Shown here: positions 5,474 through 5,627 of the stretch, piece by piece | Position numbering within the stretch: position 1 is the first letter of the stretch | Layout of the letters: each line of letters starts with the position of its first letter | NCBI RefSeq assembly: GCF_000143415.4 | Contig: NW_003314687.1 | Coordinates: 1-6,571, forward strand | Source: Selaginella moellendorffii | Taxonomy: Eukaryota > Plantae > Lycopodiophyta | Reading direction: 5' to 3' | DNA length: 6,571 nt | The notes under the pieces: generated by a model | Databases searched by the model: none | What the model was told of the DNA's origin: nothing | What the model saw: only the letters and a program-made list of their open reading frames with translations | Position numbers and translations under genes: made by a program

Positions 5474-5499
5474 GAGTAGGGGGAGTGTGAAATATTTCA

Positions 5500-5618
5500 G
5501 AGTGGGTTCAAACCGTGACTATGGCACTGGATCCCATCAGACCTCCAAAGTTAAGCGTCCCTGGGCTTGAATAGTACTGGGCTGGGTGACCACCCGGGAA
5601 GTCCAAGTGACCCCCTCT
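5500..5618 (+). rRNA. 5S rRNA gene, full length and highly divergent but structure-conserving (+1 may be A5499)
   Basis: It aligns without gaps to the recalled plant 5S consensus: GGATCCCATCAGA (5529-5541), AGTTAAGCG (5549-5557), TAGTACTGG (5572-5580), TGGGTGACC (5583-5591) and GGGAAGTCC (5596-5604). The 5' GAGTGGGTT pairs with the 3' GACCCCCTC (8 of 9 pairs, one of them G-U). It is flanked by a TATA element and oligo-T. Confidence 0.9.
5549..5589 (+). promoter_or_regulatory. Pol III type-1 internal control region (A-box, intermediate element, C-box)
   Basis: A-box AGTTAAGCGTCC (5549-5560), GA (5569-5570) and C-box GGCTGGGTGA (5580-5589). The C-box has one change from the usual GGATGGGTGA. 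Confidence 0.75.
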
Positions 5619-5627
5619 TTTTTTTTT
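5618..5627 (+). terminator. Pol III oligo-T terminator (T10)
   Basis: Ten consecutive T immediately after the 3' strand of 5S helix I. Confidence 0.9.

What the first reader, a model, noticed from the sequence alone, without database searches (positions are those of the whole stretch)
5499..5627. Highly divergent 5S rRNA with compensatory changes in all five helices
Seen, numbering G5500 as 1. Helix I: G1-C118, A2-U117, G3-C116, U4xC115, G5-C114, G6-C113, G7-C112, U8-A111, U9-G110, plus a possible extra pair A5499-U5618. Helix II: C14-G65, C15-G64, G16-C62, U17xC61, G18-C60, A19-U59, C20-G58. Helix III includes U29-A48. The helix next to the three-way junction has C67-G108, U68-A107, U69-A106, G70-C105. 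The terminal helix has G80-C96 and U84-A93 and is closed by a GUGA tetraloop. Against the angiosperm consensus as I recall it, I count about 30 substitutions in 118 nt with no indels, mostly as paired swaps, which neutral decay would not produce. TATA, ICR and the T10 terminator are all retained. However, usually conserved unpaired residues are altered (CAUA>CAAA at 12, GAAC>GACC at 43, bulged A83>C in the C-box) and there are two U-C mismatches. Inference: (a) a lineage with an exceptionally fast-evolving but functional 5S, (b) a second specialised 5S class analogous to oocyte/somatic 5S types or a TFIIIA/L5-binding 5S-like RNA, or (c) a recently decaying copy of such a variant.
Basis: partly seen in the sequence, partly recalled or inferred. 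Interest (0 to 1): 0.75.

Follow-up and report, generated by a model that had tools for sequence, protein, structure and literature searches.

The report
Fast-evolved 5S rRNA gene in rDNA spacer
This is a genuine 5S ribosomal RNA gene lying behind the large-subunit rRNA gene in a plant's main ribosomal DNA unit; it has changed several times more than other plants' 5S genes but keeps its fold, so it is most likely the plant's ordinary 5S gene.

Summary
Window 5500-5618 (+) matches Rfam 5S rRNA end to end at 90.9 bits (threshold 38). It has a TATA-like box at -31 to -26 and a T10 terminator.

It lies 3.1 kb behind the 3' end of a 26S rRNA gene on the same strand.

Against 11 intact plant 5S genes fetched here (110-116 bits) it differs at 29 of 119 positions, with no indels:
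- Eight base pairs changed on both sides and all still pair.
- 35 of 37 pairs are standard; random change would leave about 24 (0 of 200,000 trials reached 35).
- Two U-C mismatches are real, and the canonical fold is the weakest of the set.

The speed-up seems specific to 5S: 21 private changes against 4-6 in the comparators, while the 26S beside it is not unusual.

Best reading (0.8): the plant's ordinary, working 5S gene, fast-evolved under selection for structure. A second class or a decaying copy is less likely but could not be excluded, because no other copy could be fetched.

The scan found the same gene before on two other pieces of this genome (s1-392278, s1-392276), with the same verdict. 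Interest is modest.

The parts
1..2411 (+). 3' 2.4 kb of the large-subunit (26S) rRNA gene; context that makes this a linked rDNA unit
   Evidence: Rfam RF02543, 2500.6 bits, model 999-3401, cut at the window start
3135..4150 (.). 240-bp subrepeats of the spacer between 26S and 5S (4.2 copies, 98% alike); earlier partial copies lie on either side of a 100-N gap at 2720-2819
   Evidence: Tandem Repeats Finder; sequence
5079..5418 (.). 67/132-bp subrepeats that end about 80 nt before the 5S gene
5469..5474 (+). TATA-like box (TATAAG) at -31 to -26 of the 5S start. The wider 17-nt motif 5469-5485 occurs once in the window.
   Evidence: Several comparator 5S genes have a TATA-like box at the same distance. 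Its role in plants is from Cloix et al. 2003, as cited in PMC11070557.
5500..5618 (+). 5S rRNA gene, 119 nt; the transcript may instead start at A5499
   Evidence: RF00001 90.9 bits, full length; 35 of 37 canonical pairs
5549..5563 (+). box A region of the internal promoter (RNA positions 50-64); 2 of 15 positions differ from the plant consensus
   Evidence: element positions taken from the Xenopus/Arabidopsis model (established knowledge)
5566..5571 (+). intermediate element (positions 67-72); 3 of 6 differ from the plant consensus
5579..5596 (+). box C region (positions 80-97); 3 of 18 differ from the plant consensus
5618..5627 (+). run of 10 T, the polymerase III terminator; its first T is RNA position 119
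   Evidence: sequence; all comparators have a T run at the same place

Best explanation
This is the ordinary nuclear 5S rRNA gene of the plant. Earlier notes of this scan, which I did not check, name it as the spikemoss Selaginella moellendorffii. One gene copy is carried in each main rDNA unit, in the spacer about 3.1 kb behind the 26S gene and on the same strand (L-type layout).

Inferred mechanism:
- TFIIIA binds the internal box A, IE and box C.
- It recruits TFIIIC and TFIIIB, helped by the TATA-like box near -28.
- RNA polymerase III starts at G5500 (or A5499) and stops in the T10 run.
- The RNA of about 120 nt folds into the five-helix, three-way-junction shape, binds uL18 and uL5, and enters the central protuberance of the 60S subunit.

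Its sequence has changed 3-5 times more than the 5S of other green plants. Selection for structure kept almost every pair through changes on both sides. The speed-up looks specific to 5S, because the 26S gene in the same unit is not unusually diverged.

Shown here: the family match, the layout, the pairing, the signals and the rate contrast. Inferred: transcription, protein binding and ribosome entry.
For: - Full-length RF00001 match, 90.9 bits against a threshold of 38. It is the only 5S in the window.
- The 26S 3' end is at 2411 on the same strand.
- Linked 35S-5S units are reported for lycophytes, mosses, liverworts, hornworts and ferns (PMC3692318 and PMC7865372, citing Wicke et al. 2011).
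- Two complete linked units from other plants were fetched here (L122, L125) and show the same order and strand.
- 29 differences from the plant consensus, yet 35 of 37 pairs are standard, and 8 pairs changed on both sides all still pair.
- Random change would leave 24 +/- 2.4 pairs; 0 of 200,000 trials reached 35.
- The loop E 3' strand, loop D (GUGA) and 11 of 12 loop C positions are unchanged.
- TATA-like box at -31 to -26 and a T10 terminator, as in the comparators.
- No direct repeat covers 5440-5800, so it is not a retroelement LTR.
- Private substitutions in three-way comparisons. 5S: window 21, linked-type plant 6, angiosperm type 4. LSU 3' 2.4 kb: window 83, L122 59, Arachis 196.
- Two earlier notes describe the same kind of gene on two other pieces of this genome.
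Against: - There are two U-C mismatches, in helices I and II.
- The canonical fold is -29.4 kcal/mol, the weakest of 12 (the others are -33 to -42). It is 43 base pairs away from the predicted minimum-energy fold, whereas most comparators fold close to the canonical shape.
- The Rfam score is 20-25 bits below intact plant 5S genes and falls in the range of variant copies in mixed arrays.
- Three usually fixed unpaired residues are changed (U12A, A43C, A83C), and 8 of 39 internal promoter positions differ.
- No second copy from this genome or a close relative could be fetched. Homogeneity across units, expression and the absence of a canonical 5S elsewhere are therefore untested.
- The rate contrast with the linked-type plant is only suggestive (Fisher p = 0.08). 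It is strong only against the angiosperm (p = 1e-7), and there the 5S and the LSU come from different species.
- The comparators were found with a pattern that demands a conserved 28-nt core, and I kept those scoring 110 bits or more. That favours slow-evolving sequences.
Confidence: 0.8

Rival explanations
1. The linked copy, or this particular copy, is a decaying or silent relic. The working 5S genes lie elsewhere, for example in a separate tandem array that is missing from or collapsed in the assembly.
For: - Two U-C mismatches, and the weakest canonical fold of 12, which is not the minimum-energy fold.
- Rfam score 20-25 bits under intact plant 5S genes.
- Changed residues in loop A, near loop C and at the box C bulge; 3 of 6 IE positions changed.
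- 5S pseudogenes inside linked units are known in Gnetales (PMC3692318).
Against: - Neutral decay would not keep 35 of 37 pairs after 29 changes.
- The number of standard pairs equals that of intact comparators, 35-36 of 37.
- The TATA-like box and the T10 run are intact.
- No note among about 9,000 on this genome mentions a separate 5S array; this is weak evidence.
- Two other pieces carry the same kind of gene.
Confidence: 0.1
2. It is a second, specialised 5S class, like the oocyte and somatic types of frogs, or a 5S-like RNA that binds TFIIIA or uL18, existing beside a canonical 5S class.
For: It is far from the usual land-plant 5S at 29 of 119 positions yet is structurally maintained. Earlier notes report other 5S-like modules in this genome, in Cassandra-type LTRs and in a TFIIIA intron (unchecked).
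Against: - It occupies the one place where lycophytes and other early land plants keep their ordinary 5S gene.
- No canonical class has been noted in this genome.
- It is full length, with normal gene signals.
Confidence: 0.05
3. It is the 5S-like module of a Cassandra-type retrotransposon LTR that landed in the spacer.
For: Earlier notes say such elements are abundant in this genome and even occur in ITS1 (unchecked).
Against: - There is a single 5S hit in the window.
- No direct repeat includes 5440-5800.
- The match is full length, with helix I intact and its own T10 terminator.
Confidence: 0.02

Closest known systems
Land-plant nuclear 5S rRNA (Rfam RF00001), as in angiosperms and bryophytes
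   Same: - Length of 119 nt with no indels.
- Five helices and a three-way junction.
- Identical core from position 30 to 42, identical loop D, identical 3' strand of loop E.
- TATA-like box near -28 and a T-run terminator.
   Different: - 28-36 differences from each of 11 intact plant 5S genes, which differ from one another by 10 on average and 20 at most.
- 22 character states seen in none of them.
- 90.9 bits against 110-116.
- U-A in place of the usual U-U at 84-93.
- Two U-C mismatches.
- A weaker fold.
Linked (L-type) 35S-5S rDNA units of bryophytes, lycophytes and ferns (Sone et al. 1999; Wicke et al. 2011, as cited in PMC3692318 and PMC7865372)
   Same: The 5S gene lies in the spacer behind the 26S gene, on the same strand, one per unit. 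The same order is seen in the fetched units L122, L125 and L012.
   Different: Here the 5S lies about 3.1 kb behind the 26S, after two sets of subrepeats. In L012 and L122 the distance is 351 and 595 nt. Their 5S genes are canonical (110 bits).
5S pseudogenes in linked units (Ephedra; PMC3692318)
   Same: A diverged 5S sequence inside the 26S-18S spacer.
   Different: Those copies are about 70% alike among themselves and lie next to an intact gene. Here there is one copy and its changes are compensated.

Membership tests
5S rRNA (Rfam RF00001) | Covariance-model score above the curated threshold over the full model | tested here: met
   90.9 bits against 38, model positions 1-120, E = 3e-19
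5S rRNA (Rfam RF00001) | Five helices around a three-way junction, formed by standard pairs | tested here: met
   35 of 37 pairs are standard, as in the comparators (35-36). Covariation is far above the shuffled and slid controls.
5S rRNA (Rfam RF00001) | Conserved loop motifs (loops A, C, D, E) | tested here: met
   Loop D and the 3' strand of loop E are unchanged. Loop C differs at 1 of 12 positions, the 5' strand of loop E at 1 of 7, and loop A at 1 of 4 (U12A).
5S rRNA (Rfam RF00001) | Polymerase III type 1 gene signals: box A, IE, box C, T-run terminator and, in plants, an upstream TATA-like box | tested here: met
   31 of 39 internal positions equal the plant consensus. TATAAG lies at -31 to -26. 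T10 lies at 5618-5627. Whether they work was not testable.
5S rRNA (Rfam RF00001) | Transcribed and built into the 60S subunit | not testable with these tools
   No RNA or ribosome data are available here.
Linked (L-type) rDNA unit | 5S gene inside the spacer between the 26S and the next 18S | tested here: inconclusive
   The 26S ends at 2411 on the same strand and the 5S starts at 5500. The window ends in spacer repeats before any 18S.
Linked (L-type) rDNA unit | The same 5S in all or most units (homogenised) | not testable with these tools
   Only one unit is in the window. Look-ups for other copies found nothing. Earlier notes mention two more copies.
Cassandra-type TRIM LTR | 5S-like segment inside paired long terminal repeats | tested here: not met
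   There is one 5S hit only, and no direct repeat covers 5440-5800.
5S pseudogene | Uncompensated changes, truncation or lost signals | tested here: not met
   Full length. 19 of the 21 changes in paired positions keep or make a pair. The terminator and TATA-like box are present. Two mismatches remain.

The most novel reading that the evidence does not exclude
The spikemoss lineage has re-tuned its whole 5S recognition system. On this reading the 5S RNA changed 3-5 times faster than in other plants while the 26S beside it did not, because TFIIIA, uL18 and uL5 changed with it. It would include the changes in IE, box C, loop A and the helix III region. The relocated 5S mimic in the TFIIIA gene, reported in earlier notes of this scan (unchecked), would be part of the same overhaul.
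Probability: 0.15. Interest if true: 0.55.

Novelty: new member of a known kind. Interest (0 to 1): 0.3.

Why it matters
Among land plants the 5S rRNA is very uniform. The 11 intact genes fetched here differ from one another by 10 of 119 positions on average.

A lineage with 21 private changes, nearly all compensated, amounts to a natural mutagenesis of the RNA. It shows which pairs and residues TFIIIA, uL18 and the ribosome can do without.

It also has practical weight. Probes, primers and filters built on the angiosperm 5S may miss or under-score this gene.

It does not reveal a new kind of RNA or a new layout. The linked arrangement is already described for lycophytes.

Tried and rejected
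- **Other copies through ORFs.** I looked up ORFs that overlap or neighbour the 5S or the 26S end by exact sequence. Seven look-ups found nothing on record.
- **Word search with the 26S antisense ORF**. The best hit was only 69% identical, so it gave no close relative. It did give the comparator units L121, L122 and L125. The best hit, P0001, had no DNA available.
- **Exact-pattern scans** for the lineage-specific core (GACCTCCAAAG version). Viral contigs and prokaryote genomes gave 0 hits.
- **Literature.** Wicke et al. 2011 is not held. No held paper discusses the Selaginella 5S sequence. The run accessions of L122 and L125 could not be traced to an organism.
- **Free-energy folding alone.** It does not recover the 5S shape for this RNA (z = 0.33). 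I take this as the cost of the two mismatches, not as evidence against a 5S, because the covariance model and the pair counts are clear.
- **Cassandra LTR and TFIIIA-intron mimic readings.** Both rejected on context.
- **The 17-nt upstream motif 5469-5485.** It looks like a plant polymerase I start site (TATA...GGGGG), which I recall from memory only. It is unique in the window, and a similar G-rich motif lies upstream of the 5S genes of L002 and L072. I read it as part of the 5S upstream promoter.

Full report
**What is in the window.** Rfam finds two genes on the + strand. The first is the 3' 2.4 kb of a eukaryotic large-subunit rRNA at 1-2411 (2500.6 bits). The second is a full-length 5S rRNA at 5500-5618 (90.9 bits, gathering score 38, E = 3e-19). 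A permissive scan of 2300-6571 finds no second 5S.

Between the two genes lies a G+C-rich spacer. It holds 240-bp subrepeats (3135-4150), a 100-N assembly gap (2720-2819) and 67/132-bp subrepeats (5079-5418). After the 5S come an A+T-rich stretch, 64-bp repeats and a long array of 16-nt palindromic units that runs off the window.

So the 5S gene sits inside the spacer of the main rDNA unit, behind the 26S and on the same strand. This is the linked (L-type) layout. It has been reported for streptophyte algae, liverworts, mosses, hornworts, lycophytes and ferns (Wicke et al. 2011, as cited in PMC3692318 and PMC7865372). The original paper is not held.

Earlier notes of this scan call the genome the spikemoss Selaginella moellendorffii. 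I could not check that from this window. The plant-type 5S core, the linked layout and the 26S comparison below fit a non-seed land plant.

**Check of the observation.** To have real sequences to compare with, I scanned metagenome contigs for the conserved 5S core. This gave 120 loci with 137 plant 5S sequences, 99 of them distinct. The closest is identical at 91 of 119 positions, and none has the window's GACCTCC version.

Intact-looking copies score 110-116 bits against RF00001, and variant copies in mixed arrays score 60-100. The window's 90.9 bits is therefore clearly low for a plant 5S, though far above the threshold.

Eleven distinct copies scoring 110 bits or more align with the window's gene without a gap (A1). 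Against their consensus the window differs at 29 positions, 21 paired and 8 unpaired:
- Eight pairs changed on both sides and all remain Watson-Crick: 2-117, 6-113, 8-111, 16-62, 18-60, 29-48, 68-107, 69-106.
- Three one-sided changes keep or create a pair: G-U to G-C at 7-112 and 80-96, and U-U to U-A at 84-93.
- Two one-sided changes break a pair: U4xC115 and U17xC61.

In total 35 of 37 pairs are standard, the same as in the comparators (35-36). If 29 substitutions are placed at random on the consensus, 24.2 +/- 2.4 pairs survive, and none of 200,000 trials reached 35. Even with the changed positions fixed and only the new bases drawn at random, P is 0.0006.

**Signals.**
- TATAAG lies at -31 to -26. 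Several comparators have a TATA-like box at the same distance.
- The T run 5618-5627 is 10 T, and all comparators end in a T run.
- These are the elements described for plant 5S genes (Cloix et al. 2002 and 2003, as cited in PMC11070557).
Which start is used cannot be told from sequence.
- 'ICR retained' is only partly true. Box A differs from the plant consensus at 2 of 15 positions, IE at 3 of 6 and box C at 3 of 18.
- Loop D, the 3' strand of loop E and 11 of 12 loop C positions are unchanged. U12A in loop A, A43C and the bulge change A83C occur in none of the comparators.

**How unusual is it?** The 11 comparators differ from one another by 10 positions on average and 20 at most. The window differs from each by 28-36, and 22 of its character states occur in none of them.

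To see whether this is a general feature of the lineage's rRNA, I fetched rDNA from other plants through a spurious ORF antisense to the 26S:
- L121 is Arachis hypogaea.
- L122 and L125 are complete linked units (18S, 5.8S, 26S, then 5S on the same strand) from an unidentified plant, with a canonical 5S of 110 bits. In L122 it lies 595 nt behind the 26S; L125 is cut off inside its 5S.

Private substitutions in three-way comparisons:

| Gene | Window | Linked-type plant (L122/L012) | Angiosperm |
|---|---|---|---|
| 26S, 3' 2.4 kb | 83 | 59 | 196 (Arachis) |
| 5S | 21 | 6 | 4 (angiosperm-type copy) |

In the 5S, the window has more private changes than the linked-type plant (binomial p = 0.006) and than the angiosperm type (p = 0.0009). 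The contrast between the two genes is strong against the angiosperm (Fisher p = 1e-7) and only suggestive against the linked-type plant (p = 0.08).

Caveats on this comparison:
- The angiosperm 5S and the Arachis 26S come from different species.
- The comparators were found with a pattern that requires a conserved core and were then picked for high scores.
- 119 sites is a small sample.

With those limits, the speed-up looks specific to 5S and not general to the lineage's rRNA.

**Signs of weakness.** The canonical fold of this RNA is worth -29.4 kcal/mol. That is the weakest of the 12 (the others are -33 to -42). It lies 6.5 kcal/mol above a different minimum-energy fold, while most comparators fold within 8-13 base pairs of the canonical shape. 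The two U-C mismatches are the likely cause.

This keeps alive the idea that this copy, or the linked class, is slightly damaged. Against that, the overall pattern cannot come from neutral decay, the gene signals are intact, and it lies where such plants keep their working 5S gene.

**What I could not do.** I could not fetch a second copy from this genome or from a close relative. Seven exact ORF look-ups, two pattern scans and one word search gave nothing closer than 69% protein identity. Homogeneity across units, expression and the absence of a canonical 5S family elsewhere therefore remain untested.

Two earlier notes of this scan (s1-392278, s1-392276) describe the same kind of gene behind the 26S on two other pieces of this genome and reached the same verdict. 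They are AI notes, not independent proof. No note mentions a separate 5S array.

**Verdict.** This is a real 5S rRNA gene in a known kind of layout, unusually diverged but structurally maintained. It is most likely the plant's ordinary 5S (0.8). A silent or decaying copy gets 0.1, a second class 0.05 and a retroelement module 0.02.

It is a new, fast-evolved member of a known family, not a new kind of thing. What is mildly surprising is the apparently 5S-specific speed-up, which invites a test of co-evolution with TFIIIA, uL18 and uL5.

Noticed in passing
window 4500-6000: The 5S gene sits at a sharp composition step. G+C is 0.66-0.71 in the spacer before it (4500-5100) and 0.40-0.43 from the gene to about 6000. 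This could mark the edge of an inserted 5S unit with its own spacer.
   Followed up: no
window 5079-5418: 67/132-bp subrepeats end about 80 nt before the 5S. Each holds GGGGCCCAAAACGCGCG, a short palindrome and GTTGGGGAGGTACC. I did not test whether these are the same repeats.
   Followed up: no
window 5469-5485; L002 and L072 upstream of their 5S genes: The motif AAGAG...GGGGGAG lies at -28 to -15 of the window's 5S. A similar one lies at -27 to -17 of the 5S genes of an unidentified plant. It also resembles the plant polymerase I start motif TATA...GGGGG, which I recall from memory. It is unique in the window.
   Followed up: partly
window 5813-6114: Repeats of about 64 bp, each with a CCACGTG(T/G) core (G-box-like), lie just after the 5S gene.
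   Followed up: no
window 6124-6571: At least 26 units of a 16-nt palindromic repeat (CCGGGGCCCGACATGT type), arranged in 177-bp higher-order units, run off the window end. The array is strongly self-complementary and gives weak false microRNA hits.
   Followed up: no
window 2720-2819: A 100-N assembly gap lies inside the 240-bp spacer subrepeats, so the true distance from 26S to 5S is not known exactly.
   Followed up: no
window 5629-5653: A 7-bp hairpin (CTTACAA / TTGTAAG, 11-nt loop) lies directly after the T10 terminator.
   Followed up: no
L003 194-265 (-): A metagenome contig from an unidentified plant has a tRNA gene (67 bits) between two 5S genes on the same strand.
   Followed up: no
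window 2035-2403 (-): The ORF antisense to the 26S 3' end has no relative above 69% identity among 5.8 billion predicted proteins. Yet the 26S itself is only 7.8% from that of L122. This lineage's rDNA seems absent from that collection's gene calls.
   Followed up: partly
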